IMG/VR virus record: IMGVR_UViG_3300007513_000001
Location: 229,410-293,409 of that record
Direction: 5' to 3' (one strand)
DNA length: 64,000 nt
Positions 4,985 to 64,000 of the stretch are shown here, one piece after another. Numbering within the stretch: position 1 is the first letter of the stretch; each line of letters starts with the position of its first letter. A model generated the notes under the pieces. That model was not told where the DNA came from. It searched no databases and saw nothing but the letters and a program-made list of their open reading frames with translations. The translations under genes were made by a program, and so were the position numbers.

Positions 4985-5019
4985 TTATGAAATTCTAGTT
5001 AATTCTAGTTATAATTTTA

Positions 5020-6764: not shown

Positions 6765-6811
6765 TTCAGAACTTAATATGTAGTAATGAATTGTAATTAA
6801 CGAGGACCGTA

Positions 6812-48031: not shown

Positions 48032-48091
48032 ATTTTATACACTTTTGGTGTTGTGGGTATAGTTTCTTAATCTACGTTTAAGGAGATAAAA

Positions 48092-48391: not shown

Positions 48392-48409
48392 AAATAATTA
48401 TGTTTTTTA

Positions 48410-48438
48410 TTGAACAACAGAGTTTTGAAGTTTAAAAT
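48410..48438 (+). promoter_or_regulatory. sigma70-type promoter upstream of the large ncRNA candidate
   Basis: TTGAAC-N17-TAAAAT. Confidence 0.5.
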
Positions 48439-48480
48439 AAAACATAATTTACTAAACGTTCTTTAACATTGCTAATAAAA

Positions 48481-49132: not shown

Positions 49133-49144
49133 AAAGAGAAAAAA

Positions 49145-49573
49145 ATGACAGTAGAAATCGGTAGCAAAGTAGTAGTTCATTATAAAGGAACATTAAACAA
49201 CGGTGAAGAATTCGACAGCTCATATTCAAGAAATGAGCCGCTAAGTTTTACCGTAGGAAACGGAGAAACAATCGCGGGTTTTGATTCTGCTGTTGTTGGG
49301 ATGTCTATTGGGGAAGTAAAAAATATTACCCTGAGCCCATCCGAAGGGTATGGGGACGTAAATCCAGAAGCGTTTCAAAAGATTTCAAAGAATCAGTTTC
49401 CGTCAGATTTTGAACCATCAGCTGGCACTTTAGTCGAGGGAATCAATACCCAAGGCCAAAAAGTTAGAGCCATCATTGCAGAAGTTTTTGACGAAGATTT
49501 AGTTCTTGATTTTAATCACCCGATGGCTGGAAAAGAGATGAATTTCGAAATTCAGCTAGTCAACTGCGAATAA
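49145..49573 (+). CDS. FKBP-type peptidyl-prolyl isomerase with insert-in-flap domain (SlyD/SlpA-like)
   Basis: VVVHYKGTL, FDSS, IAGFDSAVVGM, EGYG, LDFNHPMAGK; start moved to ATG 49145. Confidence 0.93.
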   Translation: MTVEIGSKVVVHYKGTLNNGEEFDSSYSRNEPLSFTVGNGETIAGFDSAVVGMSIGEVKNITLSPSEGYGDVNPEAFQKISKNQFPSDFEPSAGTLVEGINTQGQKVRAIIAEVFDEDLVLDFNHPMAGKEMNFEIQLVNCE

Positions 49574-49580
49574 ACAAACT

Positions 49581-49656
49581 GCGGGAGTAGCTCAATTGGT
49601 AGAGCTTCAGCCTTCCAAGCTGATTGTTGAGGGTTCGATTCCCTTCTCCCGCTCCA
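49581..49656 (+). tRNA. tRNA-Gly (TCC)
   Basis: GCGGGAG/CTCCCGC, TCAGC-CTTCCAA-GCTGA, U73, encoded CCA. Confidence 0.97.
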
Positions 49657-49666
49657 TGGAGGTAAA

Positions 49667-49804
49667 ATGGCTAGGGTAAAAATATCAGATTTAGTTCATC
49701 AACAAAAGATTCTTGAAGACAAAATTAAGAAGATACAAATTGTTCTTTGGTCTACTGTTTTGTTTGTTGCAGTTTTTGGATATAAAGTATTGTTTGCCGT
49801 TTAG
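49667..49804 (+). CDS. 45-aa single-TM protein (not in ORF track)
   Basis: ATG after GGAGG; MARVKISDL...IVLWSTVLFVAVFGYKVLFAV. Confidence 0.6.
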   Translation: MARVKISDLVHQQKILEDKIKKIQIVLWSTVLFVAVFGYKVLFAV

Positions 49805-49814
49805 GGGAGACTTA

Positions 49815-50045
49815 ATGAAGACTTTAGTTAAAAAAGGGTCGATAGCCTATCTTAGTCACACTGGTCATAAAGGATTCAGGTATCCATCAAAAGATTCAGA
49901 AAAACTTCTTTTTGATGTAGAGGCTGAGCGAGTTTCTTGGGTTGGCGGTGGAGAAAAATTGACTCCCGTCAAAATTCCAGAATCATCAATTTTAGCTTTG
50001 GGAGATTCTGAAAAATCTGTCGTAGTTTGGGTTCATAAAAATTGA
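49815..50045 (+). CDS. small hypothetical protein
   Basis: ATG after GGGGAG. Confidence 0.65.
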   Translation: MKTLVKKGSIAYLSHTGHKGFRYPSKDSEKLLFDVEAERVSWVGGGEKLTPVKIPESSILALGDSEKSVVVWVHKN

Positions 50046-50077
50046 ACATCTAGCTATTTTAGTTAGAATTAATTTAT

Positions 50078-50154
50078 GCGCCCGTAGCTCAGCTGGATAG
50101 AGCAACGGCCTTCTAAGCCGTGGGCCGCAGGTTCGAATCCTGCCGGGCGTGCCA
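50078..50154 (+). tRNA. tRNA-Arg (TCT)
   Basis: GCGCCCG/CGGGCGT, ACGGC-CTTCTAA-GCCGT, TTCGAAT, encoded CCA. Confidence 0.97.
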
Positions 50155-50179
50155 TTTATAATTTGCAGGAGGAGATGTT

Positions 50180-50251
50180 GTGGAAGTTATTGGAGCGATT
50201 GCCATCAGCAGCATGATTGGCTTGACAGCATTAGCGTCAATTTTTGAATAG
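50180..50251 (+). CDS. 23-aa hydrophobic peptide (not in ORF track)
   Basis: Strong SD AGGAGG 7 nt before GTG; MEVIGAIAISSMIGLTALASIFE. Confidence 0.45.
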   Translation: MEVIGAIAISSMIGLTALASIFE

Positions 50252-50259
50252 GGTTTATA

Positions 50260-50508
50260 ATGAGTTATTGGAAGCGAGAAATTAAAAATTTTTTTATCTC
50301 TCCTGAATCAAGTCGCGTACACTGCACGACAGATATTGATTCGTTGGGGAAAATTGAGATTAACATCGGCCGCAGTATGACATTAAGGCTTTCTATGAAA
50401 GATGCTATGGCTTTGCGAGACGCGATTGCTATTAGTGTTATTAAAATTCAAGATGAGATGAATTATTCTCAAGACCATTCGAGAGTTACAAATGGAGATA
50501 TGGGATGA
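50260..50508 (+). CDS. small hypothetical protein
   Basis: Operon ORF. Confidence 0.6.
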   Translation: MSYWKREIKNFFISPESSRVHCTTDIDSLGKIEINIGRSMTLRLSMKDAMALRDAIAISVIKIQDEMNYSQDHSRVTNGDMG

Positions 50509-50735
50509 GTAAAATGGTGTCGATTTTTCTATCAACTTTAATTTATGTTGGAATGATTGATAATCTCGAGGGCGATTATGCAGCAGTTGAGATGTCTAAT
50601 CAGCAGGGAGAAATAACTCGATTAGAAATTCCTATTTTGCTTTTTCCGTGCGAAGTTTCAGAAGGAGACTACTTTTATACTTTTGAAATCGACGGAGTTC
50701 GAGAAATTCGCTGTGGCGAACCACCAACTGATTAA
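50505..50735 (+). CDS. DUF3006-like small protein
   Basis: IDNLEGDYAAVE...IPILLFP..VSEGD. Confidence 0.6.
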   Translation: MSKMVSIFLSTLIYVGMIDNLEGDYAAVEMSNQQGEITRLEIPILLFPCEVSEGDYFYTFEIDGVREIRCGEPPTD

Positions 50736-50745
50736 AGGAGAAAAC

Positions 50746-50982
50746 ATGTCACAAGGTGTTACTGTAATTGAAGAGTTTATTGAAAAGCTTTTTGCGCTAG
50801 AAAACGAGCAAAAGCTCCTATCAGAAGATAGGAAGCTTCTTATTGCTGATTATAAAGGGAAGCTAGATGTAAAAGCAGTACAAGCTGCAATTCGAATCGC
50901 TAAAATTAAATCAAAAGTAGACAGTTCTGATGAAGAGCTTCATAATATGGTTAATACCGTAGAAAGAAACATCAGTCTGTAA
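50746..50982 (+). CDS. GapR/DUF2312-like DNA-binding protein
   Basis: FIEKLFALENEQKLLSEDRK..IADYKGKLDVKAV..AIRI; ATG after AGGAG. Confidence 0.65.
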   Translation: MSQGVTVIEEFIEKLFALENEQKLLSEDRKLLIADYKGKLDVKAVQAAIRIAKIKSKVDSSDEELHNMVNTVERNISL

Positions 50983-51007
50983 AAAAAGCCTCTTTTTATG
51001 GTATAAT
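50978..51007 (+). promoter_or_regulatory. conserved promoter, copy 4
   Basis: TGTAAAAAAAGCCTCTTTTTATGGTATAAT. Confidence 0.75.
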
Positions 51008-51038
51008 AATACTATAAGGAGGAGGGATAAGACCTCAA

Positions 51039-51479
51039 ATGAAAATTCTTTTTCTACACGGCTTAGAATCTAAACCTGGCGGAACTAAAGCGAAAGCTCT
51101 AGAAAAGGCTGGGCATAAAGTCTTGAATCCAGCACTTCCTAAAGATTCTCTAGAAGAATCTATTGCGATTGCGCAAGGGATCATAGATAGAGACTGGCCA
51201 GATATTATCGTCGGTTCCAGCAGGGGCGGGGCAATTGCAACAGCAGTAGATAGCAAAGGTGCTAGATTGATTCTGATTGCCCCAGCCTGGAAGTTATATG
51301 GTATAACACCAAGAGCTGGTTCGGATACAACAGTGTTACACTGTCCTACTGATGATATAGTTCCCTATGAACATACAAAAGAATTAGCTGAAAAAACTGG
51401 AGCTAAAATTATAGAGTGCGGAGAGTGTCACCGAATGAGTGATAACGATGCTTTGAGTTCTCTAGTAGAATCAGTTTGA
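51039..51479 (+). CDS. YqiA-like alpha/beta hydrolase
   Basis: FLHGLES, VGSSRGG nucleophile elbow, DDIV, CHRM. Confidence 0.85.
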   Translation: MKILFLHGLESKPGGTKAKALEKAGHKVLNPALPKDSLEESIAIAQGIIDRDWPDIIVGSSRGGAIATAVDSKGARLILIAPAWKLYGITPRAGSDTTVLHCPTDDIVPYEHTKELAEKTGAKIIECGECHRMSDNDALSSLVESV

Positions 51480-51487
51480 TTTAACTT

Positions 51488-51516
51488 AAAATGCACCGAA
51501 CATTCGGTGCATTTTT
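51488..51516. terminator. intrinsic terminator, symmetric
   Basis: AAAATGCACCGA-ACAT-TCGGTGCATTTT(T). Confidence 0.85.
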
Positions 51517-51623
51517 GTATATTTTTAGTATCCATTTTGTATTTCGTGATTATTTTTAAATTAGCTAAAATTTTGCTGATAAGGAAATTTTGGTACAAAC
51601 TTGCTTATTAAAGGAGTAAAAGC

Positions 51624-53498
51624 ATGGGTAAAGTTATTGGAATTGATTTGGGCACGACAAATTCGTGCGTGGCTGTAGTCGAGGGTACAAACCCTATAGT
51701 TATAGCTAATGAAGAAGGAAGCAGAACAACTCCTTCCGTTGTGAGCTATAATGATACCGGAAGACTAGTAGGAATAGCAGCTCGTAGACAAGCTATCGTT
51801 AACCCCGAATCTACCGTGTATTCTGTGAAGCGTTTTATGGGAATGAGATTTGACGAATCTAAAACAGAGGTCGAAAAAGTTCCTTACGAAATAGTTTCTG
51901 GAGATAGCGGAGAGTGCCGAATAAAAATTAAAGATAGCAAACTGTCTCCTTCTGAAATATCAGCGCAGATTTTAACTAAGCTAAAGAGGAGTGCTGAAAG
52001 ATATTTAGGCACGACTGTAGACGAAGTCGTTATTACAGTACCAGCTTATTTTAATGACTCACAGCGTCAAGCAACTAAAGATGCTGGAAAAATTGCTGGG
52101 TTAGAAGTTAAAAGGATCATTAACGAACCGACAGCTGCAGCTTTAGCTTACGGCATGGATAAAGCTGGCGAGCAAAAGGTTGCTGTTTTTGACTTGGGCG
52201 GTGGTACATTTGATATCTCAATTTTAGAAATATCAGATGGAGTTGTCGAAGTTTTGAGCACGAATGGAGATACTCACCTTGGGGGCGACGACGTAGATCA
52301 ACTTTTGATTGATTGGCTATTTAAAACTTTTGAGGCGGACACCGGAATAGATCTTTCTAAAGATAGCATGGTTATTCAAAGGCTTAGAGAAGCAGCTGAA
52401 AAAGCTAAAATAGAGCTCTCTACAGCGCAGCAAACTGAAATCAATCTTCCCTTCTTGACAGCTGACGCGACCGGTCCGAAACATCTAACTGCGAATTTGA
52501 CAAGATCAAAGTTTGAACAAATGATAGATTCTTTTGTTCAAAATACACTGGTTCCGGTTAAAAATGCGCTCGAAGATGCAAATATTGCCAAAGAAGAAAT
52601 TGATGAAGTGATTCTTGTTGGAGGGTCTACTAGAATTCCAGCTGTTAGAGATAGAGTTGAGAAGTTTTTCGGCAAAACTGCAAATAGTTCGGTTAATCCA
52701 GACGAAGTTGTTGCTCTTGGAGCAGCAGTGCAGGGAGGCGTATTTTCAGGAGACGTTAATGACGTGCTTCTTCTTGACGTTACCCCCTTATCTTTGGGCA
52801 TTGAAACCTTGGGAGGTGTAACAACATTTTTAATTAATCGAAACACCACGATTCCAACTTCTAAATCAGAAACCTTCAGCACGGCAACAGATAATCAGCC
52901 AGCGGTTGATATACACGTCTTGCAGGGAGAGAGAAAGTTTTCTAAAGACAACAGAACTCTTGGAAATTTTCAATTAGCTGGCATCCCTCCAGCTCCTCGA
53001 GGTTTACCACAAATCGAGGTAACTTTTGATATCGACGCGAATGGTATTTTGTCAGTTTCTGCAAAAGACAAAGCTACTGGAAAAGAGCAGAGTGTAAGAA
53101 TCGAAGGCCAATCTGGGCTTTCAGATAGTGATATATCTGATATGATTAAAAATGCCGAGGCTGCTGCAGAAGAAGACGAAAAGAAGTTTAAGGTTATAGA
53201 AGAAAGAAATAAGTTAGACACTCTTGTATACCAAGCTCAAAAAGCAATGAAAGAAAATCAAGACAACATGACGGAAGATTCTAAATTTTCTCTTGGGGAA
53301 TTTATTATCGCTGCCGAAAGTGCTTTAGACAGCGATAGTTTAGATGAGCTTAACCTAGCGTTTAATAATTTGCAGTCTAAGCTTCATGAAATAAGTTCAG
53401 AACTTTACCAATCGTCAACTACCGCTGAAGATTCTAGCGACACGAGCGATGATTCAGGTGATATTATAGACGCTGATTTTGAAGATGTTGACTCTTGA
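51624..53498 (+). CDS. dnaK: Hsp70 chaperone DnaK
   Basis: [69 protein letters not shown] tail. Confidence 0.98.
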
Positions 53499-53542
53499 GT
53501 GTCTTTTGGTATATTTATAATGAAGTAAACTGAGGGTGCGAG

Positions 53543-54373
53543 ATGCGCTTTTTAAAAGAATACATTTCTCAAGTTTTAAAAGAAGCTACGAAATTACCAG
53601 ACGATTTTTATAAACCTTTAGAAAGCGCCATCGCATCATCTCAGTTTTGGACTTTTGCCAACGGTCCGGAAGACGCAGATTTCAATCGGGTCGGCGGAGA
53701 AGATGTAGACCAGACAGAAGCCGCAGAAGTTTTAGGGTACGCTCTTTTAGATTTTTTTAGATCTATAAAATATCCTCTTATACCTCTCGTAAGGTCTCCC
53801 GATGTCGGAGTAAAAGGTAACGATAAATTCTTGGTGGGAAAAGGTCACCGATATTATCCAGACAAGATTGTTGCTGGTGGACAAATGGGTTTGACTGATA
53901 CGGGTAGGAGAATTCTGTATCTAGACCTGATGGTTTATGATGAAGATATCGACACAAACGATATTTCTGCTAATTCTGTAGTTTCAGACGTCGCTTCAGT
54001 TGTAAGACATGAATTAATTCATGCAGATCAATATGATAAAAGAGCTAAAAAACAGAAGACAACGAGAGTAAAAGCTAAAAAAGCTTATGAGGAAGATGGA
54101 AGTATTGTAACTTCAGATGACAGACACCAATATCTTTCTTCGCACATCGAAATCGATGCATATGCTCATGAATTTGCAGAACAGTTGCTTCAAGATTTCG
54201 GTTTAGAAAGGGCGCTACAGTTAATAAGAACTTCTAACAAGGCAGAAGACTTGCCGGTTTCAGATCAATTAGAAGAATATCTAAAGGGGATATCAAGCAA
54301 AAAAGCTTTTAGAAATCTGATGGGAAAAGTTTACACTCAAATAATGGATTTAAAAGATAGAAAAATTTATTAA
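53543..54373 (+). CDS. leader-bearing zincin-like metalloprotease
   Basis: MRFLKEYISQVLKEA leader; RHELIHADQY (HExxH) and EIDAYA. Confidence 0.65.
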   Translation: MRFLKEYISQVLKEATKLPDDFYKPLESAIASSQFWTFANGPEDADFNRVGGEDVDQTEAAEVLGYALLDFFRSIKYPLIPLVRSPDVGVKGNDKFLVGKGHRYYPDKIVAGGQMGLTDTGRRILYLDLMVYDEDIDTNDISANSVVSDVASVVRHELIHADQYDKRAKKQKTTRVKAKKAYEEDGSIVTSDDRHQYLSSHIEIDAYAHEFAEQLLQDFGLERALQLIRTSNKAEDLPVSDQLEEYLKGISSKKAFRNLMGKVYTQIMDLKDRKIY

Positions 54374-54454
54374 TATTTTATTTTACTAAACATTATAGAT
54401 TTTCGGTATAAGCAGTTCATAAAATGATATTTAGTGATATCGAGTGGGAAAAAA

Positions 54455-55099
54455 ATGCAGCTAGTCAGAAAATATGTAAGAGCTCTTTTAATAGAGCAGC
54501 TAGAAGCGGAGCTTCAAACACCCTCTACGGGAGTCCCAAAAGGCGTTTGGACACTACTTCAGCCAGGTAGCCCAGAGTTTGAACAAGCTAGAATAGAACT
54601 AAATGATTTGATCACCATGGCTTATTCGAACATTGGCGGTCATTTAAAGATAACTAGTCCCGAAAGTTTGAACAGATATCAATTTTGGGTCGTCCAAGAT
54701 TTAGATGACGACGACCAAATAGATGTAGCCCTCTTTGGCAAGCCTGATATTGGTGGAAACAAACTTGGAGGAATAGGGCATGATGGATCTAGTGCTGCGA
54801 AGTCTGCATATAAAAACAAATCTGCAGAGCTTCGTTCTGGTGGAGAAGTAGCAGGAGTTGGAAATTGGTGGGGTGAAGTTAGTGGAAAAGCTGCATATGC
54901 AGTTTTGTCTCGTGGCGCACCCGCAATTACCGACGAAGCTCATGTCCGAACTCTTCTTGCTGGCGACCTTATCGTTTGGCACGGGATGCACCCAGATCCT
55001 GATGCTCCACCACTGTTTAAAGCTAACCCCGGATGGTACACTAAGACTTTTAGAGATGGTTCTGAACATACAAAAATAATAGCTGGGAGCCCGACGTGA
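54455..55099 (+). CDS. leader-bearing hypothetical protein
   Basis: MQLVRKYVRALLIEQ leader. Confidence 0.75.
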   Translation: MQLVRKYVRALLIEQLEAELQTPSTGVPKGVWTLLQPGSPEFEQARIELNDLITMAYSNIGGHLKITSPESLNRYQFWVVQDLDDDDQIDVALFGKPDIGGNKLGGIGHDGSSAAKSAYKNKSAELRSGGEVAGVGNWWGEVSGKAAYAVLSRGAPAITDEAHVRTLLAGDLIVWHGMHPDPDAPPLFKANPGWYTKTFRDGSEHTKIIAGSPT

Positions 55100-55344
55100 A
55101 AATCACAAAACTCCAACTCAGAAGAATAATTGCAGAAGCTATCGACTTAGATATCGAAAAGGGCGACGTTATTCTTACAGGAAGATTTAAAAATAAGAGA
55201 ACTATTGTAAAAGATATCGGAGTAGACGATTTAGGTCAACCCACTATTAATGGAATGAAAGTCCTGAATTTTAGAATTGAAAAACTTATGCCCAAAGATA
55301 AATGGAGCCAAAAATCTAAAGAAGCTCTTAAGGATAAAAAATGA
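55096..55344 (+). CDS. MKITK-leader small protein with SH3-like body
   Basis: MKITKLQLRRIIAEA; GDVILTGRFKN. Confidence 0.8.
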   Translation: MKITKLQLRRIIAEAIDLDIEKGDVILTGRFKNKRTIVKDIGVDDLGQPTINGMKVLNFRIEKLMPKDKWSQKSKEALKDKK

Positions 55345-55646
55345 GAATTACAAAACTGCAGCTTAAAAGAGTGATAAGAGAAGCTATAAACGAAAGCCAG
55401 TGGCAAGACAATATAGATGATTTTCTTTCTGACCGCGAAGCTAATCCTCACGATGGAGGCATGTACGGCGAAGATGAAGAAGACCGAAAATGGAGTGAAG
55501 CCGAATACGACCGCGGCTACCAGGACGGCTATGATGCTCTTCCACCCGCCGGCGACGCCTCAGCAGATTACGATGTGGGCTACGAAGACGGGAACAACGA
55601 TGGCAACGCTGAATCAGAGCGTGATTATGAAATGGGGTACAGATAA
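55341..55646 (+). CDS. MKITK-leader highly acidic protein with YxxGYxxG repeats
   Basis: MRITKLQLKRVIREA; YDRGYQDG, YDVGYEDG, YEMGY. Confidence 0.8.
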   Translation: MRITKLQLKRVIREAINESQWQDNIDDFLSDREANPHDGGMYGEDEEDRKWSEAEYDRGYQDGYDALPPAGDASADYDVGYEDGNNDGNAESERDYEMGYR

Positions 55647-55949
55647 ATGAAAATTACAAAGAGACAAATCAGAAGAATTATTAGAGAAGAGAAGCGAAAG
55701 GTCTTACGAGAGGGTATTACCCAAGAAGAGGCTTTGGCCGTCGCTATCCAAGACTACGTTATAGCGCTCCAAGACCAGATGGACTTCGACTCCGTCCAGG
55801 ACTTCCTACCAGATGTTATTGGTCAAGTCGAGGATTGGTTTGCAAATGAAGCTATCGCAGAAGAGTTCGCTGATGGCGAGAGCGGTGAATACGACCTTGA
55901 TCCGAATGATCAAGCATATGCTGCCGGTCGGCCATGGGAGCATAACTAA
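55647..55949 (+). CDS. MKITK-leader acidic protein
   Basis: MKITKRQIRRIIREE..VLREG. Confidence 0.8.
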   Translation: MKITKRQIRRIIREEKRKVLREGITQEEALAVAIQDYVIALQDQMDFDSVQDFLPDVIGQVEDWFANEAIAEEFADGESGEYDLDPNDQAYAAGRPWEHN

Positions 55950-55950
55950 A

Positions 55951-56352
55951 ATGAAAATCACGAAAAGACAGCTTAGAAGAATTATTAGAGAAGAGCTAGA
56001 TTACGGCGAGTTTCAGAGAGATCCAGAAGTTCAAGCGGCTCTACAAGCCGCAGGATTTAATCAAGACGGCAGCTTTGGAATGGAAGGCTATCCTGGACCA
56101 AGCGATTGGCAACTATACTCCCCGGAAAATATGGAGCAAGCCGAAAGGTGGATTGATGCTGCTATTGCAATGAATGATGCATTACGAAAAGCCGAAACTG
56201 CTTTAGACCGCGGCGAATATAGCTCAGCCCAAGATGCCTGGTATGATATAATTTATCCAGTGCAAAAAGAATATAGTGATACCGGGGCAGCCGATACAGA
56301 GGGCAGAGAGGTCGCCGGTGACTGGTTAGAACAAGCGGGATTTTCGTGGTAA
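55951..56352 (+). CDS. MKITK-leader acidic protein
   Basis: MKITKRQLRRIIREE; start moved from 55813. Confidence 0.8.
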   Translation: MKITKRQLRRIIREELDYGEFQRDPEVQAALQAAGFNQDGSFGMEGYPGPSDWQLYSPENMEQAERWIDAAIAMNDALRKAETALDRGEYSSAQDAWYDIIYPVQKEYSDTGAADTEGREVAGDWLEQAGFSW

Positions 56353-56353
56353 A

Positions 56354-56644
56354 ATGAAAATTACAAAAAGAAAACTCAGAAGAATTATCCGGGAAGAAAA
56401 AGAACTTCTTTTAAAAGAAGCAATTAAATTTCCGTGGGGCGAAACTGACCCAGAATATCCTGACGATAATGCTGTATTACCACCGACTAGAAAAATAGAA
56501 TTTAAGTGGGGGCCAGGTGGCTTGGAAATGGAAATGCGTATGAACGGAGAGAAAATTCTTGGTTTTACGCGGCAATCACAAGTCGACGAATTAATTGAAC
56601 AACTAGAGGGTCTACTTGCTGGACCAATGAGGACATCACCATGA
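56354..56644 (+). CDS. MKITK-leader protein
   Basis: MKITKRKLRRIIREE..LLKEA. Confidence 0.8.
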   Translation: MKITKRKLRRIIREEKELLLKEAIKFPWGETDPEYPDDNAVLPPTRKIEFKWGPGGLEMEMRMNGEKILGFTRQSQVDELIEQLEGLLAGPMRTSP

Positions 56645-56922
56645 AAATCACAAAAAGACAACTCAGAAGAATCATCAAAGAAGAAAGACGGCTCTTAAAA
56701 GAGCAGGGTGATCCTATCGCTGACCAGCTTCTTGGAGATTTCGTTACAGATTTAGCTAGTGGGCTAATGGATATGTATGATCCCCAAGACGCAAATCGAG
56801 TTGGATCTGAAGAAGATTTTTATGAAGCAGTAACGACAATAACAGTTGAGGTAGAAGACCTTGTACGCCAGCGATTAAATGATTTATGGTCTGGCGATTT
56901 AAAACTAGAGCTAATGAAATGA
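56641..56922 (+). CDS. MKITK-leader acidic protein
   Basis: MKITKRQLRRIIKEE..LLKEQ. Confidence 0.8.
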   Translation: MKITKRQLRRIIKEERRLLKEQGDPIADQLLGDFVTDLASGLMDMYDPQDANRVGSEEDFYEAVTTITVEVEDLVRQRLNDLWSGDLKLELMK

Positions 56923-57134
56923 AAATCACAAAAAGACAACTCCGGCGCCTGATTAAAGAAGTTCTACAAGAAGATAAGTCTGGGAAAGGAGCTTGCCCAG
57001 ATTCCGGGTGCATTAAGAAAAGTGGCGATGATTGGAGAATTATCAGTAACAAAACTGGTAAAATGTGGCCACAGAAATACAAAACGAGAAAAAGCGCAGA
57101 AAATGCGCTAGACGCTTATCATGCGAGTAGATGA
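56919..57134 (+). CDS. MKITK-leader basic protein
   Basis: MKITKRQLRRLIKEVLQE; ATG overlaps upstream TGA. Confidence 0.8.
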   Translation: MKITKRQLRRLIKEVLQEDKSGKGACPDSGCIKKSGDDWRIISNKTGKMWPQKYKTRKSAENALDAYHASR

Positions 57135-57166
57135 TATTCTAGAAAATAAAATCTAATAAAATTAAA

Positions 57167-59938
57167 ATGTTATCAATTAATGGAATACCGATCAAGATCA
57201 AAGTAGCTCGAGACGACAAATCTCGAGCTCATGGTCTTATGGGGGTAAAGAGTATGCCGGAAAACGAGGGTATGCTTTTCGTTTTTTCAGAGTCGAAACC
57301 TAGATCTTTTTGGATGAAAGATACTCTGTTTCCGCTTTCTATTGCTTACATTGACGAAGACCATAAGATTATCAACATTGAAGACATGAAGCCACACGAT
57401 ACTTCTAGTGTTGTCTCTGCTTCACCCGCGATATGCGCATTAGAAATGAACCGAGGGTGGTTTAGAAACAACGGCATCCGACCGGGAGACGCTGTTGACG
57501 GAATCAAAAGGGTTTATAGTGAATCTATTTTAAGGAAATCTATTAGACTATTGTTGAGAGAATCATCTACACCCACACGAACTTCATTTGATATTCCTAT
57601 ACCTGCTGATTTAAAAGATATTCATTCACGAATTAAGTACGCGGGTCGAGAATTATTTTTAGTTGGTGGTGCTGTTCGAGATGCGCTTATGGGTAAAACC
57701 CCTAAAGATTATGACGTAGCAACAAATGCGAGTCCTGAAGCCGTTATAAAAATATTGCAAAAAGATCCAAGTCTTAGGTTAGATTTAACTGGTAAACAGT
57801 TTGGAGTAGTGAGAGTAAAAACTAGTGACGGTGGAGAATACGAAATAGCTACTTTTAGAGAAGACATAGGAAAAGGTAAGTCTACAAAGGTAAAATTTTC
57901 TACGATTGAAAACGATGTTAAAAGAAGAGATTTAACAATTAATGCGCTGTTCTACGATATGGATTCTAAAGAAATCGTAGATTATGTCGGCGGAATTGAA
58001 GACATTGAAAACGGAATAATCCGAGCAGTAGGAAACCCAACTCAAAGATTTGACGAAGATAGAATTAGAATTTTGAGAGCCGTCAGATTTGCTGGGAGGA
58101 TGGGATCAAATTTAGACCCGCAAACTAAGCAAGCTATTTTAGACGACAACAAACTAATAGATACGGAAACTGGTCAGCAGATACCAGCTGATAGAATCAC
58201 TGAAGAGTTTGTAAAAGGGATAAAGTCAGCGCAAGATCCCGTTGGGTTTTTAGCTACTATAAATGACCTCGGTCTTTTTGATCAAATTTTGCCAGGCTTA
58301 GAGCTGAATTTTAGTACTTCTGGAACAACTGACCACATAGCTCAATTGGCTGCGTTGTTAAATAATAATTCTACAGATTCTATATCTTCGACTTTAAAAA
58401 GAATGAGATATTCTAACGATGAACGGAATATCATTAATTTTTTAATTAGTTTTGGAAATATTAATCGAGACACTGCTCCAGCGCTTAAAAAAGATTTCAA
58501 GCGCTACAAGATACCAGAAAGTCATTTAATAGAATATGCAGCGGCTTCAGACAGCCTTTCACAAAATAAACTGGATTCGTTTCTGCAGTTTGCTTCTGAG
58601 CCACCAGCTGGAAACTCTAAAGAATTAATGGCTAAAGGAATCAAAGGGCGAGATCTTGGTGTTGCTCTTGCCGCAGCAGAGGGAGATGCTTTTGCGAAGT
58701 TGATTGGCGAGTCAGTAATCGTTAGGCTTTTGACGGAAGCCGCCAAAGGACCACAAGATCTGCCTGACGGAATATTTGTACAGATCAAGCCCGACGATTG
58801 GGGCGTTCGAGTCGCTTATGTAAACAAGCTCAATAATGTGCTCTCGATGGAAGCTGACATTCGGGGCGTAGTTATGGTAGAAAGGCTTTCAGAAGATGAT
58901 ACGGATTTAGGGCCGTGCGACGACGCATGGATGATCGGATCTTCAGAGGCAGCCCCTGGTTGGGGCCCAATGCTTTACGATGTTGCTATGGAATATGCTA
59001 CTATGAAAGGCGGCGGGCTTATGGCAGATCGAGGTTCAGTCTCTCCAAAGGCTCGTAATGTGTGGGACTATTACATGAATAATCGCGGTGACGTTACAGG
59101 AATCCAGATGGATGACCGCAAAAACACTCTCACACCAGAGGAAGAAGATAATTGTAGCCAAAAGGTTGCCGGTCTTGACAATCGGTCACAACAGGATAAG
59201 TCGAAGCTATCCCCAGCCGGCACTTACAAGACAGATTGGGTTGACTCTCCTTTAAGCAAACGCTGGACAAAACCACCCACCACCATCGAGGCTTTAAGAG
59301 CTGCAGGCAAACTCGTCTGGCATGAAGCGGGCGATCATCTTCCACTCAGAGATTTGGATGCAGAAGGTCCAATCTTGCACTTGGAAAATTTCGTGAAAGA
59401 AATATTAAAAGAAGAAACTTTTAGAATTCTAATACCGAGCCCTCCTTCTGAAAAAGAAAGGTTAAAAGAGCTTCCATACGTAGTTCAAAAAAATCAAAAT
59501 CCGAGCTTTAGCCCAGAGATTTTGAAGACGTTAGATAAGAGAGTTTCAAAGTTATTTAATTTTTTAATAGTGAGCGCTGGATATCCGGACGTTTTTGAAA
59601 GAATAAAAGAAACAAAAAACAGCATAAAACCAATTATCAAGTTTCACAAAAATTATTTTGATTGTCTCCGACCAGATGAATTAGCGGATTCTTATGGGCT
59701 AGATTTTCCTGTTAGCTATTTGGACAGTGCGCAGAGTCCGTCTTATCCTTCGGGTCATACAACCCAAGCGTTTTACTTAGCACATGTTTTGGCAAGTGAA
59801 TATCCAGAAATTTCAGAAGATTTTTATAATTTAGCTCAAATGGTGGCCGACTCTAGAATAGAACATGGGGTGCATTTACCTTCAGACAATGAAGCGGGAA
59901 AACTTCTTGCAAAAACTATATACGGGTGGGAAGTTTAA
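57167..59938 (+). CDS. cca: four-domain fusion: DUF192 + CCA-adding enzyme + GNAT-like domain + PAP2 phosphatase
   Basis: GLM..EGMLF..FWMKDT..PLSIAYI..ALE (DUF192); VGGAVRD..KDYDVAT, EIATFR, RRDLTINA, FDEDRIRILRAVRF (class II CCA); GWGPMLYD..SVSPKARNVW (GNAT-like); K..RP, PSGH, SRIEHGVHLPSD (PAP2). Confidence 0.88.
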   Translation: MLSINGIPIKIKVARDDKSRAHGLMGVKSMPENEGMLFVFSESKPRSFWMKDTLFPLSIAYIDEDHKIINIEDMKPHDTSSVVSASPAICALEMNRGWFRNNGIRPGDAVDGIKRVYSESILRKSIRLLLRESSTPTRTSFDIPIPADLKDIHSRIKYAGRELFLVGGAVRDALMGKTPKDYDVATNASPEAVIKILQKDPSLRLDLTGKQFGVVRVKTSDGGEYEIATFREDIGKGKSTKVKFSTIENDVKRRDLTINALFYDMDSKEIVDYVGGIEDIENGIIRAVGNPTQRFDEDRIRILRAVRFAGRMGSNLDPQTKQAILDDNKLIDTETGQQIPADRITEEFVKGIKSAQDPVGFLATINDLGLFDQILPGLELNFSTSGTTDHIAQLAALLNNNSTDSISSTLKRMRYSNDERNIINFLISFGNINRDTAPALKKDFKRYKIPESHLIEYAAASDSLSQNKLDSFLQFASEPPAGNSKELMAKGIKGRDLGVALAAAEGDAFAKLIGESVIVRLLTEAAKGPQDLPDGIFVQIKPDDWGVRVAYVNKLNNVLSMEADIRGVVMVERLSEDDTDLGPCDDAWMIGSSEAAPGWGPMLYDVAMEYATMKGGGLMADRGSVSPKARNVWDYYMNNRGDVTGIQMDDRKNTLTPEEEDNCSQKVAGLDNRSQQDKSKLSPAGTYKTDWVDSPLSKRWTKPPTTIEALRAAGKLVWHEAGDHLPLRDLDAEGPILHLENFVKEILKEETFRILIPSPPSEKERLKELPYVVQKNQNPSFSPEILKTLDKRVSKLFNFLIVSAGYPDVFERIKETKNSIKPIIKFHKNYFDCLRPDELADSYGLDFPVSYLDSAQSPSYPSGHTTQAFYLAHVLASEYPEISEDFYNLAQMVADSRIEHGVHLPSDNEAGKLLAKTIYGWEV

Positions 59939-59939
59939 G

Positions 59940-62414
59940 ATGACTGTGTTACGTGATCACATAAGAGCGCTGCTTGCGGAAGAAACAAAAGCATCCCGTG
60001 CAGTTCCGGAACTGGGCCTCTGGTTACCTAAAAACTTTAACGATCTCATAGAAAAGAAATACCCAGCCTATGCAATCCCAGATGAAGAGTGGGACGAAGG
60101 GTCTATTTCTTGGTGGATGCATGCAGAGTCGATCGAGGACGCGTGGCAGAAGAGAAATCAAGAAATTTCTGGCGACAAAACAATGGCCGTAGCAAAGACT
60201 GCATCCGGTGTTGGTGGTGGCATGACCGGTGTGGGTATCAGCGGCCTCCTCTACGCTGGTGGCCTCATCGTCGACGCTCTTGGCGGCGGCGGTATGGCAT
60301 CGCTTGCTTTAAAACTGCTTGGAGCCAAGGGCATTTTTCTTTCGATCGGCCATGAAGCCCTTAAAAAAGGTGGGTTTGATACCAAGCTAAGGCGAGAATT
60401 TCAGAAAGAAATTAGGTGGGATGAAAATCTTCTAAAAGGTATAAAAGAATCTGAGGCAGAGGCAGTCGAAAATGCTTACATGGAGTATTTTTGGGATATG
60501 ATTAAAAATAAGCCTCACGCGCACTTTGGGGTGGAGTTCGAAGACATAAACGATTTTTACCTGAGGACATCAGAAAGTGATATGCTACAGCCGACTGGAA
60601 CGAGGAAAGTTCGTGTGCCATCTCAGGACGAAAAAGATCTAGCTAAGCTTATAGCCACAAACCCTTCTGCTGGTGCTTCAAATAGGTTAAGGGGTCGTGA
60701 CTCGAGAGAAGCCCAAGCAGGAATGAGACAATTGTCGCAGAATGAACTGCGGAAATATATTCGTTCCCTACTAAGTGAATCCACCCAATACGACGATCAC
60801 TTCAAGCCGCTCATGGATTCTGGTTATGACGGTATCAAGCAAGCAATAGAATTAGCAGATAGTCTCGGTATGTCGCCTCGAGAATTACCGTGGAATGATG
60901 ATACGTTAAACGCTTATTTGTTTTATGCTCCAGGTGAAGATACACTTGAAAAGCTGACCAAAATTGGCTGGACTACCGAAGAATGGGTAGAACAGGGCCG
61001 AAGAGCTTTTGAAGACCGTGAGAGAGAATTAGGCTTGCGGGAATCAGCTGATTATGACGATGATTATTCATCTTCAATGGAGGCCATGCTTGCAATGCTG
61101 GTCGTTGATCAAGCTCAGGATAATGGAGCCGAACAGGCATTGATGATGTTTGAACCAATGGCATTGAGTGATGATCCAGAATATCAATTAGATCTAGATT
61201 TGTTAGCAGCAGAAATTTCTCAGAGATTGCAGCCCCATACAGAAAAATACCAGAAATATGATGGCGTGGACAAGTTCGGTGTTCTGCTTGTGTGGCAATC
61301 TACCGTAGATGAGATAATCAAATTTGTAACTGGAGATGGCATCAACCGAAGCTTTCGGCCTTCTTGGAAATCTTTCGAAAGAGAGGAAGATGTATCAGAA
61401 ATGCTGGGGCCAGTGTTAAGGCAAACAGTGACTGCGTGGAAAAAGAAAGAGCAAGGCAAGCCTGCAATGGCAGACCACGAGGAAGAGTGGGTTGTTCGCG
61501 AGTGTGTAAGAAGAATATTGACAGAGCAGATTAATTCAGTTTTAGACAAGATCGTTAAGCTTGTTGAGACAGGTCATGGAAATCAAGCTTTCGAAATCAT
61601 GGTTATGATGCCAGAAGAATTAGACACGGCCATGGTGATCACTACACTTCGAAAAGAATTAGCTAATTTACGCGCCATAACACGATCACCAGAGCCACAC
61701 CAGTGGGCTTACTCTAGATATAGAAAAAAGCTTCCTGATCCAGAGTGGGATAAGTTTGTTAAGTTTGCCCGTGGCTTTTCTGATTTTATCGGTTACCAAG
61801 GAAGTATGCTCGATCCGAATAATCATAACCCTCAACATCGGGCGCGCCCGCGCGATCCACTTGCCAAAACACATGACAGGTGGCCTTCAGCCGAAGATAT
61901 GATACAGATGCTACAGCAAAAAATTGGCGGTGAGACTATTAAAGAAGCAGCACGCCCGAACTATGTAACTGGCCATGGAATATTTGATGATCGGAGCCCA
62001 ACTGAAAATGAAAAGAAATTACTTGATGTGTTTGTTGGAAGTGGCGCCCAGGCTTTGGAGTTAGCTGAATTAACTGGCCACGATGAGCTAGCATCTTGGA
62101 TGCACAAGATAATAGATCCCATCCGTGAGAGAATTAAAACAATTGAAGATACAGTGGCGCTTATACAGTCTGATGAAATTACAGAGCGATGGAAGATAGA
62201 AGATATTTCGATAAAACTTGAAAATGAGGCTGAAGAAATACTTCGTGGCTACTATCCGTCAAGCAAGCTACACGACAGCTGGGAAGACAGTGTATTCGAA
62301 ATGGCGGATTATATTTGGTACCACGGTGTAGATTACGATAGCTACAACGTCGCCTCAGAAACCAAGTCAAAACAAGACTTAGACAAGATAAAGATGTGGG
62401 CAGGTGTCGCATGA
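59940..62414 (+). CDS. multi-module polyprotein-like ORF of leader-separated helical modules
   Basis: MTVLRDHIRALLAEE leader; internal LRKYIRSLLSES, LGLRES, VRECVRRILTEQ, TIKEA; start moved from 59865. Confidence 0.8.
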   Translation: MTVLRDHIRALLAEETKASRAVPELGLWLPKNFNDLIEKKYPAYAIPDEEWDEGSISWWMHAESIEDAWQKRNQEISGDKTMAVAKTASGVGGGMTGVGISGLLYAGGLIVDALGGGGMASLALKLLGAKGIFLSIGHEALKKGGFDTKLRREFQKEIRWDENLLKGIKESEAEAVENAYMEYFWDMIKNKPHAHFGVEFEDINDFYLRTSESDMLQPTGTRKVRVPSQDEKDLAKLIATNPSAGASNRLRGRDSREAQAGMRQLSQNELRKYIRSLLSESTQYDDHFKPLMDSGYDGIKQAIELADSLGMSPRELPWNDDTLNAYLFYAPGEDTLEKLTKIGWTTEEWVEQGRRAFEDRERELGLRESADYDDDYSSSMEAMLAMLVVDQAQDNGAEQALMMFEPMALSDDPEYQLDLDLLAAEISQRLQPHTEKYQKYDGVDKFGVLLVWQSTVDEIIKFVTGDGINRSFRPSWKSFEREEDVSEMLGPVLRQTVTAWKKKEQGKPAMADHEEEWVVRECVRRILTEQINSVLDKIVKLVETGHGNQAFEIMVMMPEELDTAMVITTLRKELANLRAITRSPEPHQWAYSRYRKKLPDPEWDKFVKFARGFSDFIGYQGSMLDPNNHNPQHRARPRDPLAKTHDRWPSAEDMIQMLQQKIGGETIKEAARPNYVTGHGIFDDRSPTENEKKLLDVFVGSGAQALELAELTGHDELASWMHKIIDPIRERIKTIEDTVALIQSDEITERWKIEDISIKLENEAEEILRGYYPSSKLHDSWEDSVFEMADYIWYHGVDYDSYNVASETKSKQDLDKIKMWAGVA
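60783..60893 (+). repeat. 37-codon module duplicated at 63456..63566
   Basis: TQYDDHFKPLMDSGYDGIKQAIELADSLGMSPRELPW vs TEYDSHFKPLMDSGFDGIKQAMELADSLGITSQELPW (29/37 identical). Confidence 0.9.
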
Positions 62415-62935
62415 ACCCACTCCGTGAATACATAAGGGAAATGCTTACTGAAGCCAGCACAGAGGAGAAGACCGCTTCGATCAACGATATGCTCAATGCT
62501 GAAAAAGAGGTAGCCAAGCTTACCAATATATTTTGGGGCAGCGGCGCCCAGGGGCTCCAGCTGGCTGAGATGGTGGGAGCGACTGATAAAGATGGGATCC
62601 CGCTTTCTGAGATTTTTGATGAAATTGTTAATGATGTCGTTTGGCTAATTGAAGAGGTGGAAAAGTTCGGAGAAGAATTTAAGAAAACACCACCCAAAAC
62701 CCATTGGGCCGCTACAAACAGTGACAAGCACATGGAGACGATTCAACGGCAAATCATAGATGAGATCGCAATGACAGGATTATATCCCGGTATCTCAGAC
62801 GAACTACACGATCATCTTGTACATGTTGCTACGAAAGCTGTTTGGAGCATTGTGCCTCACCCATGGGGTAAAGTGGATACCGAGCAAGGTGCAAGATCAT
62901 TGGCTTGGCTCAAGAAATGGGCAGGTGTCGCGTGA
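62411..62935 (+). CDS. leader-bearing helical protein, paralog of the last module of 59940..62414
   Basis: MNPLREYIREMLTEA; FWGSGAQGLQLAE; KKWAGVA end shared. Confidence 0.8.
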   Translation: MNPLREYIREMLTEASTEEKTASINDMLNAEKEVAKLTNIFWGSGAQGLQLAEMVGATDKDGIPLSEIFDEIVNDVVWLIEEVEKFGEEFKKTPPKTHWAATNSDKHMETIQRQIIDEIAMTGLYPGISDELHDHLVHVATKAVWSIVPHPWGKVDTEQGARSLAWLKKWAGVA

Positions 62936-63417
62936 ACCTGCTCCGTGAATACATAAGAGTTCTAGTCGAGAAAAGTGAAGGTGAAGACCCTGTGCGCGAA
63001 GACAGAATGAAAGTATCCCAGATGTTCTGGAACATCGGCGCAGGTATGGGAATTCGGCTGGCAGAAATGACTCCAGGCTTGGAAGATCTTGCTGCTGAGT
63101 TTGAAGAGTTTCGGATTCTCGTGGAGGAGTTTATTGATCTTAGTGAGAGATTTATGGCCCAACCTCCGAAAGACAGCGCTGTGCAATGGACCATCCAGAT
63201 ACGCACAATTAAAAAGAATATTCAAACAAGAGCAGCAGAACTGCACTGGCACCGGCCGGGTCACGCAGCCGATAAAGAACTCGATTCTGCGCACCGCCGC
63301 TGGGTGCAGATGTTTTTAGAGGCACTCCGGTGGGCACACTGGACCCATACTCAAGGCGCACACGCACATTCAGACCAAGAAGAATATGAAGCTCTAAAAG
63401 ACTGGATAGTTGTATGA
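62932..63417 (+). CDS. leader-bearing helical protein, same paralog family
   Basis: GTG start overlapping TGA; MNLLREYIRVLVE; MFWNIGAGMGIRLAE. Confidence 0.8.
   Translation: MNLLREYIRVLVEKSEGEDPVREDRMKVSQMFWNIGAGMGIRLAEMTPGLEDLAAEFEEFRILVEEFIDLSERFMAQPPKDSAVQWTIQIRTIKKNIQTRAAELHWHRPGHAADKELDSAHRRWVQMFLEALRWAHWTHTQGAHAHSDQEEYEALKDWIVV
62933..62969 (+). repeat. 37-bp exact direct repeat at gene starts (second copy 63415..63451)
   Basis: tgaacctgctccgtgaatacataagagttctagtcga; partial third copy at 62412. Confidence 0.95.
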
Positions 63418-64000
63418 ACCTGCTCCGTGAATACATAAGAGTTCTAGTCGAAGCCACCGAATACGACTCTCACTTCAAACCACTCATGGACTCAGGCTTC
63501 GATGGCATCAAGCAAGCAATGGAACTAGCCGATAGTCTGGGCATAACCTCTCAAGAATTGCCTTGGGACATGGGTTCGATTGATGAGTACGCATGGGAGA
63601 TGCGGGATGACGTACCATGGCCAGAAGTTTTAGAACCCACCGGTTGGACTGAAAAAGATTATCGAAACGCTTTTGATGCTAAATGGAAGAGCATCCCCGG
63701 TGCACAACCTCATTGGGACTTGACCGAGCAGAAGGTTCTAGCTCAAGGGATGTGTTTTCCGTTCGCAATTGAGAAAGCTGAAGAGTGGTTTGAAGACCAT
63801 TTTACGAAGGGTGGCCCTGGTCGCAAGCCAAAGAGGCATCCGGCTCTGAACAACATGGACAAGTTCAAGGTTGTGCATGGGAAGGTAACTGACAAGTGGG
63901 AGAAGCCACCGAAACCTATCGTTCATGCATGGGTGGAAATGGGTGACTTGGTCTTTGATGACCAAACGAAACACACGAAACCCGACGGCATTCCGAAAGA
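63414..64000 (+). CDS. leader-bearing two-module protein ending in a transglutaminase/papain-like domain (runs off right edge)
   Basis: Not in ORF track; MNLLREYIRVLVEA, duplicated module, DLTEQ, then GMCFPFA...VVHG...HAWVE..D..FD. Confidence 0.7.
   Translation, partial: MNLLREYIRVLVEATEYDSHFKPLMDSGFDGIKQAMELADSLGITSQELPWDMGSIDEYAWEMRDDVPWPEVLEPTGWTEKDYRNAFDAKWKSIPGAQPHWDLTEQKVLAQGMCFPFAIEKAEEWFEDHFTKGGPGRKPKRHPALNNMDKFKVVHGKVTDKWEKPPKPIVHAWVEMGDLVFDDQTKHTKPDGIPK

What the first reader, a model, noticed from the sequence alone, without database searches (positions are those of the whole stretch)
59940..63566. Accordion of duplicated helical modules, alternately fused and free-standing
Seen: the 824-aa ORF has five leader-separated modules; module 2 recurs at 63456 (29/37 aa identical, with many further synonymous changes); module 5 (GSGAQALELAE...KMWAGVA) recurs as gene 62411 (GSGAQGLQLAE...KKWAGVA) and more distantly 62932; junction DNA tgggcaggtgtcgc is shared at 62397 and 62918, and a 37-bp exact repeat at 62933 and 63415. 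The region looks more GC-rich than the rest. Inference: ongoing duplication and shuffling via leader DNA; a fused versus separate state is interchangeable, as expected if a protease frees the modules.
Basis: partly seen in the sequence, partly recalled or inferred. Interest (0 to 1): 0.62.

Follow-up and report, generated by a model that had tools for sequence, protein, structure and literature searches.

The report
Leader-tagged phage cargo proteins, shuffled
A 293-kb marine T4-like phage carries a long run of genes whose unrelated protein modules all begin with the same 14-residue leader ending in the cut site of the phage's head protease. These are most likely proteins loaded into the capsid and injected with the DNA, and related phages carry the same modules either fused into polyproteins or as separate genes.

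Summary

It is part of a larger feature. A leader array of about 14.8 kb runs from window 53543 across the contig junction to genome position 4313. A leader profile finds 39-41 copies in this phage, all on the + strand.

The genome is a complete, uncultured marine T4-like phage with a gp21-type prohead protease and Gp23-type capsid genes. Residue 14 of the leader is an invariant Glu, with Leu or Ile two residues before it. That is the T4 gp21 cut site (L/I-x-E). The layout from Met1 parallels the T4 capsid-targeting sequence of IPII and IPIII.

Ten related contigs carry the same modules in other fusion states. In one of them, homology to the window starts inside a leader, and near-identity begins at the next degenerate one.

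Best reading: capsid-targeted, protease-processed cargo proteins and polyproteins that are shuffled at the leader DNA. The shuffling is shown. Capsid targeting and cleavage are inferred. It is a new variant of a known kind.

The parts
53543..54373 (+). First gene of the leader array: 276 aa, N-terminal leader, HExxH motif (possible zincin-like peptidase)
54455..55099 (+). Leader-tagged 214-aa protein, no known family
55096..57134 (+). Seven small genes (71-133 aa), each starting with the K-I-T-K-R-Q-L-R-R-I-I-R/K-E form of the leader. They are packed at -4 to +1 nt spacing.
57167..59938 (+). 923-aa polyprotein: DUF192, then poly(A) polymerase-type (Pol-beta) nucleotidyltransferase domains (PolyA_pol head plus RNA-binding domain), which I read as a likely tRNA CCA-adding enzyme, then a GWGP-motif domain that is a paralogue of a free gene at genome 2495-3184, then a PAP2 phosphatase. 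The domains are joined by leader-like linkers.
57521..57562 (+). Internal leader 1 of the 923-aa ORF, with Glu in the place of Met1, ending L-R-E
58706..58738 (+). Internal shortened leader 2 of the 923-aa ORF, ending L-T-E. A co-occurring relative's contig matches from 58726 onward and is preceded there by ATG plus leader codons.
59381..59413 (+). Internal leader-like linker 3 of the 923-aa ORF, ending L-K-E. A relative's contig diverges at 59370.
59940..62414 (+). 824-aa polyprotein of five mostly helical modules (the finding)
59940..59981 (+). Leader of module 1 (aa 1-14)
60738..60779 (+). Leader of module 2 (aa 267-280)
61029..61043 (+). Short L-G-L-R-E linker between modules 2 and 3. The same linker recurs in relatives, and a relative's contig joint ends exactly at 61043.
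61485..61526 (+). Leader of module 4 (aa 516-529). Homology to relative L021 begins at 61507, inside this leader.
61896..61946 (+). Degenerate leader between modules 4 and 5, ending I-K-E. The last mismatch to L021 (61928) lies here, before the 99.9%-identical block.
62411..62935 (+). Free-standing paralogue of module 5 (174 aa). Modelled as an all-helical bundle.
62932..63417 (+). More distant free-standing paralogue (161 aa, GTG start)
63414..64000 (+). Start of a further polyprotein: a module-2 paralogue, then more domains. It runs across the contig junction to genome position 999, with an internal leader at genome position 190.

Best explanation
The repeated leader is a capsid address plus a protease cut site. 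It is the counterpart, in this phage lineage, of the T4 capsid-targeting sequence (CTS) carried by the internal head proteins.

Proposed steps:
1. A 14-residue amphipathic helix at the start of each module binds the scaffolding core while the prohead assembles (inferred).
2. The phage's gp21-type prohead protease cuts after the invariant Glu14 of the L/I-x-E motif. In polyproteins it also cuts after a second Glu that sits where Met1 would be. This frees each module inside the head (inferred).
3. The freed proteins travel with the DNA into the next host and act early (inferred). They include a likely tRNA CCA-adding enzyme, a PAP2 phosphatase, a weakly GNAT-like domain, an HD_4 hydrolase, many small acidic proteins and the helical modules of the finding.

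If cleavage separates the modules anyway, it matters little whether two modules are encoded as one ORF or two. The 42-nt leader DNA is shared by all of them and serves as a portable patch of homology. A crossover between an internal leader and an N-terminal leader swaps the upstream context. That duplicates, shuffles, fuses and splits modules, and this evolutionary part is shown.
For: The phage:
- The genome is a complete 293-kb virus record with terminal repeats. It has a Peptidase_S77 (gp21) gene and two Gp23-family capsid genes.
- The protease aligns with T4 gp21 and keeps the motifs that align with the T4 gp21 regions I recall as holding the catalytic His and Ser.

The leader:
- T4 gp21 cuts after Glu in L/I-x-E. 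The T4 CTS is the first 10 residues of IPIII, with residues 4 and 7 needed for targeting and 8 and 10 for processing (PMC9026906).
- T4 IPII and IPIII begin M-K-T-Y-Q-E-F-I-A-E. The leader here, read in the same register from Met1, shares M1, K2, E6, an aromatic at 7, I8 and often E10.
- Glu14 is the only invariant column across both leader types.
- Residue 12 is L or I in 74/79 N-terminal and 16/16 internal leaders. L/I-x-E ends at residue 14 in 64/79 and 13/16.
- In internal leaders, the place of Met1 is Glu in 11/13.
- The leader heads unrelated bodies, as in T4, where only the CTS is shared (PMC3012670; PMC12373910).
- About 60% of identical leader residues use different codons, so selection acts on the peptide.
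- A sister clade uses a different leader that still ends (I/V)-x-E at residue 14.
- The capsid protein has a candidate maturation site, L-R-E then A.

Shuffling:
- Six of 12 module families occur both free and fused.
- The breakpoints of the L021 mosaic fall at leaders.
- Loose ends of co-occurring contigs fall at leader edges.
Against: - No virion proteome, no N-terminal sequence and no cultured relative exist. Targeting, cleavage and injection are all inferred.
- A profile of the leader does not find T4's own CTS, and finds 0-1 marginal places in Mel-JY01, immuto and a 484-kb uncultured phage. Homology to the T4 CTS cannot be shown; the likeness is one of pattern and position.
- Most cargo here is acidic, whereas T4's internal proteins are described as basic (PMC9026906).
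- Some first modules, such as DUF192, have no N-terminal leader, and nothing I found shows that a CTS works from inside a protein.
- Forty or more different packaged proteins would be many times T4's number.
- No T4-type late promoter was found near the array.
- The protease-leader docking job gave no verdict.
Confidence: 0.6

Rival explanations
1. The polyproteins are uncut 'polyvalent proteins'. On this view the leader is only a shared helix that binds a common partner, such as a chaperone (the phage's own DnaK, for instance), a host target or a sister helix. It would be neither a capsid address nor a cut site.
For: - Multi-domain injected proteins with disparate enzymes are known (PMC5512222; PMC7824862).
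- The 923-aa ORF combines DUF192, a Pol-beta-type nucleotidyltransferase and PAP2.
- A DnaK gene lies directly upstream of the array.
- The leader is modelled as a helix of low confidence.
Against: - The single invariant residue is the terminal Glu, with L/I two residues before it. This fits a protease site better than a binding helix.
- Internal leaders gain a Glu where Met1 would be.
- Free and fused states interchange freely, which is easiest if the products end up the same.
- DnaK was not found in the fetched flanks of the eight relatives.
Confidence: 0.15
2. The modules are cut apart by a different protease, for instance the leader-tagged HExxH protein at 53543-54373 or a host enzyme. Their destination need not be the capsid.
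For: - Zincin-like peptidases are proposed to process polyvalent proteins (PMC5512222).
- The first gene of the array has an HExxH motif.
- Weak Atlas leads point to ImmA/IrrE (M78), SprT-like and LPD23.
Against: - No Pfam or NCBIfam match supports a peptidase.
- The site pattern, L/I-x-E with cutting after Glu, is that of gp21-type serine proteases, and one is encoded in the head module.
Confidence: 0.1
3. The repeat is kept as DNA or RNA, as a mobile regulatory or translation-initiation cassette like the promoter-stem-loop cassettes of T4-type phages. The peptide would be a by-product.
For: - Mobile regulatory cassettes do mediate shuffling in T4-type genomes (PMC2839356 and PMC4122927, listed).
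- Several leader copies share near-identical DNA.
- The shared W-A-G-V-A junction DNA contains an AGGTG Shine-Dalgarno-like word 6 nt before the next start codon.
Against: - About 60% of identical residues use different codons.
- Leaders occur in frame inside long ORFs.
- All profile hits at score 6 or more are in the coding frames of the + strand.
- A sister clade has other residues but keeps Glu14.
Confidence: 0.03
4. The long fused ORFs are assembly or frameshift artefacts of a metagenomic contig.
For: - The record is metagenome-derived.
- De Bruijn contigs break at the repeated leader DNA.
Against: - Colinear contigs without differences cover the fused ORF in runs from two studies.
- Fused forms of the same families recur in independent contigs and in the protein library.
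Confidence: 0.02

Closest known systems
T4 internal head proteins IPI, IPII, IPIII and Alt, with their capsid-targeting sequence, processed by the gp21 prohead protease
   Same: - A short N-terminal leader is shared by otherwise unrelated proteins.
- The leader ends in L/I-x-E.
- A gp21-family protease sits in a T4-type head module.
- The genes lie in variable loci.
- The register from Met1 is similar (M1, K2, E6, aromatic 7, I8, E10).
   Different: - The leader is 14 residues, not 10, and a profile of it does not detect T4's CTS.
- There are about 40 or more copies per genome, against a handful in T4.
- The leader is also used as an internal linker in polyproteins of up to 923 aa.
- The cargo includes recognisable enzymes and is mostly acidic.
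Ejection or inner-body proteins of giant phages (phiKZ, 201phi2-1, SPN3US), matured by gp21-like proteases
   Same: - Many head-internal proteins, including paralogue families.
- Propeptides are removed after Glu at a short motif.
- Propeptide regions can carry several cut sites.
   Different: - Those phages use another motif; from memory it is S/A/G-x-E, and I did not check it here.
- They are a different lineage (not Gp23/T4-type).
- The reviews read here do not mention a uniform portable leader, or fused and free interchange of modules.
Polyvalent proteins (Iyer et al. 2017)
   Same: - Unrelated enzymatic domains sit in one polypeptide that is predicted to be delivered with the DNA.
- Pol-beta nucleotidyltransferase, GNAT and alarmone-related domains are typical members.
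- Processing by a protease is proposed.
   Different: - Here the domains are separated by a repeated leader carrying a serine-protease site.
- No embedded zincin domain was detected.
- The same modules also exist as single leader-tagged genes.
Mobile regulatory cassettes (PeSLs) that mediate modular shuffling in T4-type genomes
   Same: A short conserved sequence at gene boundaries acts as the recombination site for module exchange.
   Different: Here the shared patch is coding and selected as a peptide. It lies at the start of, or inside, ORFs rather than between genes.

Membership tests
T4-type CTS-bearing internal head proteins | The phage has a T4-type head module with a gp21-family (Peptidase_S77) prohead protease | tested here: met
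   PF03420 scores 84.7 bits at G000 171570-171989. Gp23 family hits are present. The alignment to T4 gp21 is 52/183 identical, and the motifs aligned with the T4 regions I recall as holding the catalytic His and Ser are kept.
T4-type CTS-bearing internal head proteins | A short N-terminal leader shared by proteins that are otherwise unrelated | tested here: met
   39-41 leader copies in the genome and 73 in eight relatives. The bodies fall into 12 or more unrelated families, some with different Pfam domains.
T4-type CTS-bearing internal head proteins | The leader ends in the gp21 site L/I-x-E, cut after Glu | tested here: met
   The motif is present: Glu14 is invariant in A4 and L/I is at residue 12 in 74/79 and 16/16 leaders. 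Cutting itself was not tested.
T4-type CTS-bearing internal head proteins | Sequence homology of the leader to the T4 CTS | tested here: inconclusive
   Five identities and one conservative match in 10 positions, in register from Met1. The leader profile finds nothing in the T4 genome. The sequence is too short for statistics.
T4-type CTS-bearing internal head proteins | The protein is present in the mature head with the leader removed, and is injected into the host | not testable with these tools
   There is no cultured member. No modules were found in 50,697 phage records.
T4-type CTS-bearing internal head proteins | Genes lie in variable loci where cargo is exchanged | tested here: met
   Different module orders and fusion states in ten related contigs. 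The mosaic breakpoints of L021 fall at leaders.
Polyvalent proteins (Iyer 2017) | Two or more domains of disparate biochemical activity in one polypeptide of a phage | tested here: met
   The 923-aa ORF has DUF192, PolyA_pol and PAP2.
Polyvalent proteins (Iyer 2017) | An embedded zincin-like metallopeptidase, or large polyvalent-protein-associated domains (LPDs) | tested here: not met
   No such Pfam hit in the 923-aa or 824-aa ORFs. There is only a weak Atlas lead (LPD23, score 0.86) for the separate gene at 53543.
PeSL-type mobile regulatory cassettes | An intergenic promoter plus stem-loop motif flanking the shuffled genes | tested here: not met
   Genes in the array are spaced -4 to +1 nt apart, with no intergenic room. 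The shared element is coding.

The most novel reading that the evidence does not exclude
A cosmopolitan, uncultured lineage of marine T4-like jumbo phages uses one portable 14-residue address-and-cut-site to load dozens of different proteins into the capsid. The cargo includes a likely tRNA CCA-adding enzyme, a phosphatase and an alarmone-type HD hydrolase. Many of these proteins are made as head-protease-processed polyproteins, a strategy otherwise typical of RNA viruses. If so, the injected proteome of such phages can be read directly from sequence, and it evolves by leader-to-leader recombination.
Probability: 0.5. Interest if true: 0.78.

Novelty: new variant of a known kind. Interest (0 to 1): 0.66.

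Why it matters
If the leader is a capsid address, three things follow.

1. It is a sequence-only handle on which proteins uncultured T4-like jumbo phages inject. That is where counter-defence and host-takeover functions are expected.
2. It would show that a dsDNA phage can use its head protease to process true polyproteins of unrelated enzymes. That would explain why gene fusion and fission are neutral in this locus.
3. It offers a natural, compact cargo-loading tag for large capsids.

The evolutionary part stands on its own. It is an unusually clean case of a short coding sequence acting as the recombination joint for protein modules, with breakpoints mapped to the leader.

Tried and rejected
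- DNA and protein searches of 50,697 phage records with the region, the 824-aa ORF and the conserved K-E-D-P-M-G-F module found nothing.
- Module 1 of the 824-aa ORF has no relative in the viral contigs.
- Pfam, PHROGs and NCBIfam leave almost all modules unnamed. The single PHROG hit (terminase small subunit, E 4e-4, no significant stretch) was dismissed.
- The AF2 model of gene 62411 is good (pLDDT 86.8). Foldseek against PDB and BFVD gave no match at E 1e-3 or better.
- The AF2 model of the whole 824-aa ORF is poor (pLDDT 56.8). Only modules 2 and 5 are confident, so it was used only for the mostly helical secondary structure and for no other argument.
- Docking of the protease with a 40-residue leader segment gave no verdict. 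It counts neither for nor against.
- The T4 late promoter TATAAATA is not enriched. A TAGAATAAA-like word seen before the portal and capsid genes and before 57167 did not generalise.
- DnaK was not found in the fetched flanks of the eight relatives.
- A RiPP-type leader and core reading was rejected: the modules are folded domains of 100-270 aa.
- An encapsulin or microcompartment cargo-tag reading was considered from memory and set aside. The only capsid-type genes looked for and found are the phage's own Gp23-type head genes.
It was redone from coordinates.
Full report
**Observation.** The ORF map shows an 824-aa ORF (59940-62414). It is followed by genes at 62411, 62932 and 63414 whose start and stop codons overlap by 4 nt.
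- The 14-mer at 62397 and 62918 occurs nowhere else in the window.
- The 37-bp exact repeat lies at 62933 and 63415.
- Module 2 matches the 63414 ORF at 29/37 aa, and 13 of the 30 identical residues in the 42-codon stretch use different codons.
- Module 5 is homologous to genes 62411 and 62932 beyond the end motifs, with BLASTP E values from 2e-23 to 6e-6.
- The region is richer in GC (0.461 against 0.394).

The ORF has three canonical leaders, at aa 1-14, 267-280 and 516-529. It also has a short L-G-L-R-E linker and one degenerate leader.

**What surrounds it.** The window is the last 64 kb of a complete 293,409-bp virus record, and the two ends of the record overlap by 38 bp. The last ORF of the window therefore continues into genome positions 1-999. 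The leader array runs from window 53543 to genome position 4313, about 14.8 kb, where a cysteine synthase gene follows.

The array holds:
- a leader-tagged protein with an HExxH motif;
- seven small genes with a K-I-T-K-type leader;
- a 923-aa ORF in which DUF192, a poly(A) polymerase-type (Pol-beta) nucleotidyltransferase (likely a CCA-adding enzyme), an unnamed domain and a PAP2 phosphatase are joined by leader-like linkers;
- the 824-aa ORF;
- nine further genes.

A second cluster of small K-I-T-K-type genes lies at genome 47.9-58.6 kb, and single copies lie elsewhere, one of them on an HD_4 protein. A leader profile gives 39 hits in + strand frames, none in - strand frames and none in shuffled proteins. 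An independent profile search gives 41 places, all on the + strand.

**What kind of phage.** The genome encodes a Peptidase_S77 (T4 gp21) prohead protease and two Gp23-family capsid genes, in a head module with terminase, portal and scaffold. The protease aligns with T4 gp21 and keeps the motifs that align with the T4 regions I recall as holding the catalytic His and Ser. The capsid protein is under 50% identical to any cultured phage, and the modules have no match in 50,697 phage records. Public runs that hold the region are marine or seawater metagenomes from several studies.

**The leader.** Counted from Met1 it reads M-(K/N)-(L/I)-(L/T)-(R/K)-x-(Y/Q)-(I/L)-R-x-(L/I)-(L/I)-x-E.
- Glu14 is the only invariant column across both leader types.
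- Residue 12 is L or I in 74/79 N-terminal and 16/16 internal copies.
- T4 gp21 cuts after Glu in L/I-x-E. The T4 capsid-targeting sequence is the first ten residues of IPIII, with positions 4 and 7 needed for targeting and 8 and 10 for processing (PMC9026906).
- T4 IPII and IPIII begin M-K-T-Y-Q-E-F-I-A-E. In the same register, the leader here shares M1, K2, E6, an aromatic at 7, I8 and often E10.
- In internal leaders the place of Met1 is Glu in 11 of 13 cases, usually with a hydrophobic residue two before it. The leader could therefore be cut out on both sides.
- About 60% of identical leader residues use different codons, so the peptide is what is selected.
- A sister clade found by the profile search uses a different leader that still ends (I/V)-x-E at residue 14.

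**Shuffling is shown.** Eight IMG/VR contigs (65-284 kb) carry 73 leaders, all on the + strand, in other orders.

Clustering 108 modules from nine genomes gives 12 body families, and six of them occur both free and fused. Examples:
- DUF192 heads a polyprotein here without its own leader. In L013 it is a free gene with a leader.
- The K-E-D-P-M-G-F module is free in nine cases and fused in three.

The family of module 5, 62411 and 62932 has only 36 representatives among 1.84 billion proteins. Among them:
- modules 4+5 as a separate 315-aa gene;
- module 3 with its own leader;
- proteins with one or two tandem copies of module 2 followed by L-G-L-R-E-S and a 62932-type module.

The clearest case is contig L021. 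Its DNA has a single mismatch to the window over 61929-63826. It is about 80% identical across module 4 (61507-61928). It shows no homology upstream of 61507, which lies inside the leader of module 4. There L021 has a start codon and a different upstream gene. Both transitions fall on leaders.

In four metagenome runs, colinear contigs confirm the fused ORF. Contigs of co-occurring relatives start, stop or switch at leader edges: 58726, 59370, 61043, 62411 and 62452.

**Mechanism.** I conclude that the leader is this lineage's capsid-targeting and maturation signal. The array would then encode head-internal, injected proteins, some of them made as polyproteins that the head protease separates. 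Leader-to-leader recombination generates the accordion of modules.

The evolutionary half is demonstrated. Targeting, cutting and injection are inferred from the protease, the site pattern and the T4 precedent. T4-family internal proteins likewise share only their leader (PMC3012670; PMC12373910).

Against this reading:
- The leader profile does not find T4's CTS.
- The cargo is mostly acidic.
- Some first modules lack an N-terminal leader.
- No late promoter was found.
- The docking job gave no verdict.

**The modules themselves.** Gene 62411 folds as a confident six-helix protein with a floppy leader, but it has no structural neighbour. What the helical modules do is open. The whole-ORF model is too poor to use.

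**Comparison and novelty.** The nearest known systems are:
- the T4 internal proteins with their CTS;
- the protease-matured ejection proteins of giant phages;
- the polyvalent proteins of Iyer et al..

Compared with these, three things are new: the number of leader copies, the use of the leader as an internal linker between unrelated enzymes, and the documented interchange of fused and free states with breakpoints at the leader. Five literature searches found no description of this leader. I rate it a new variant of a known kind.

Noticed in passing
window 51624-53498: A full-length DnaK/Hsp70 gene lies directly upstream of the leader array. It was not found in the fetched flanks of the eight relatives.
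   Followed up: partly
G000 176269-178167 and 178261-180150 (outside the window): Two tandem Gp23-family capsid genes, 87% identical and with identical N-terminal propeptide regions. This is far closer than T4 gp23 is to gp24.
   Followed up: partly
G000 47940-58638 (L018): A second cluster of about 18-25 consecutive small genes that all start with the K-I-T-K-R-Q-L-R-x-I-I-K/R-E leader. A leaderless SET-domain gene (56991-57488) sits among them.
   Followed up: partly
G000 63893-64504 (L018:16894-17505): An HD_4 (alarmone-hydrolase-type HD domain) protein with a leader a few residues after its start.
   Followed up: partly
window 53543-54373: The first gene of the array has an HExxH motif. 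Atlas leads are weak: ImmA/IrrE M78, SprT-like and LPD23. It may be a packaged zincin-like peptidase.
   Followed up: partly
window 60198-60311: Module 1 of the 824-aa ORF contains a Gly-rich hydrophobic stretch of about 38 residues. It could be membrane-active.
   Followed up: no
L001 1340-1954 and protein P0005: The same 33-residue piece precedes the leader on two different cargo bodies, so a 'pre-leader' also moves as a unit.
   Followed up: no
proteins P0008-P0018: A sister clade uses a variant leader (M-K-L-L-F-E-N-W-R-K-Y-I/V-N-E) on homologues of module 5. Glu14 is kept.
   Followed up: partly
window 51039-51479 and L014 12879-13770: An alpha/beta-hydrolase-like gene is free and leaderless here. 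In L014 it lies in one reading frame upstream of a leader and another module.
   Followed up: partly
window 62397-62410 and 62918-62931: The shared junction DNA encodes the conserved W-A-G-V-A C-terminus. It also contains an AGGTG Shine-Dalgarno-like word 6 nt before the overlapping start codon of the next gene.
   Followed up: no
G000 4313-5182 and 6273-7325 (L001): A cysteine synthase (PALP family) follows the array. An ORF whose translation looked IMP dehydrogenase-like by eye lies further on; it was not scanned. Both look like auxiliary metabolic genes.
   Followed up: no
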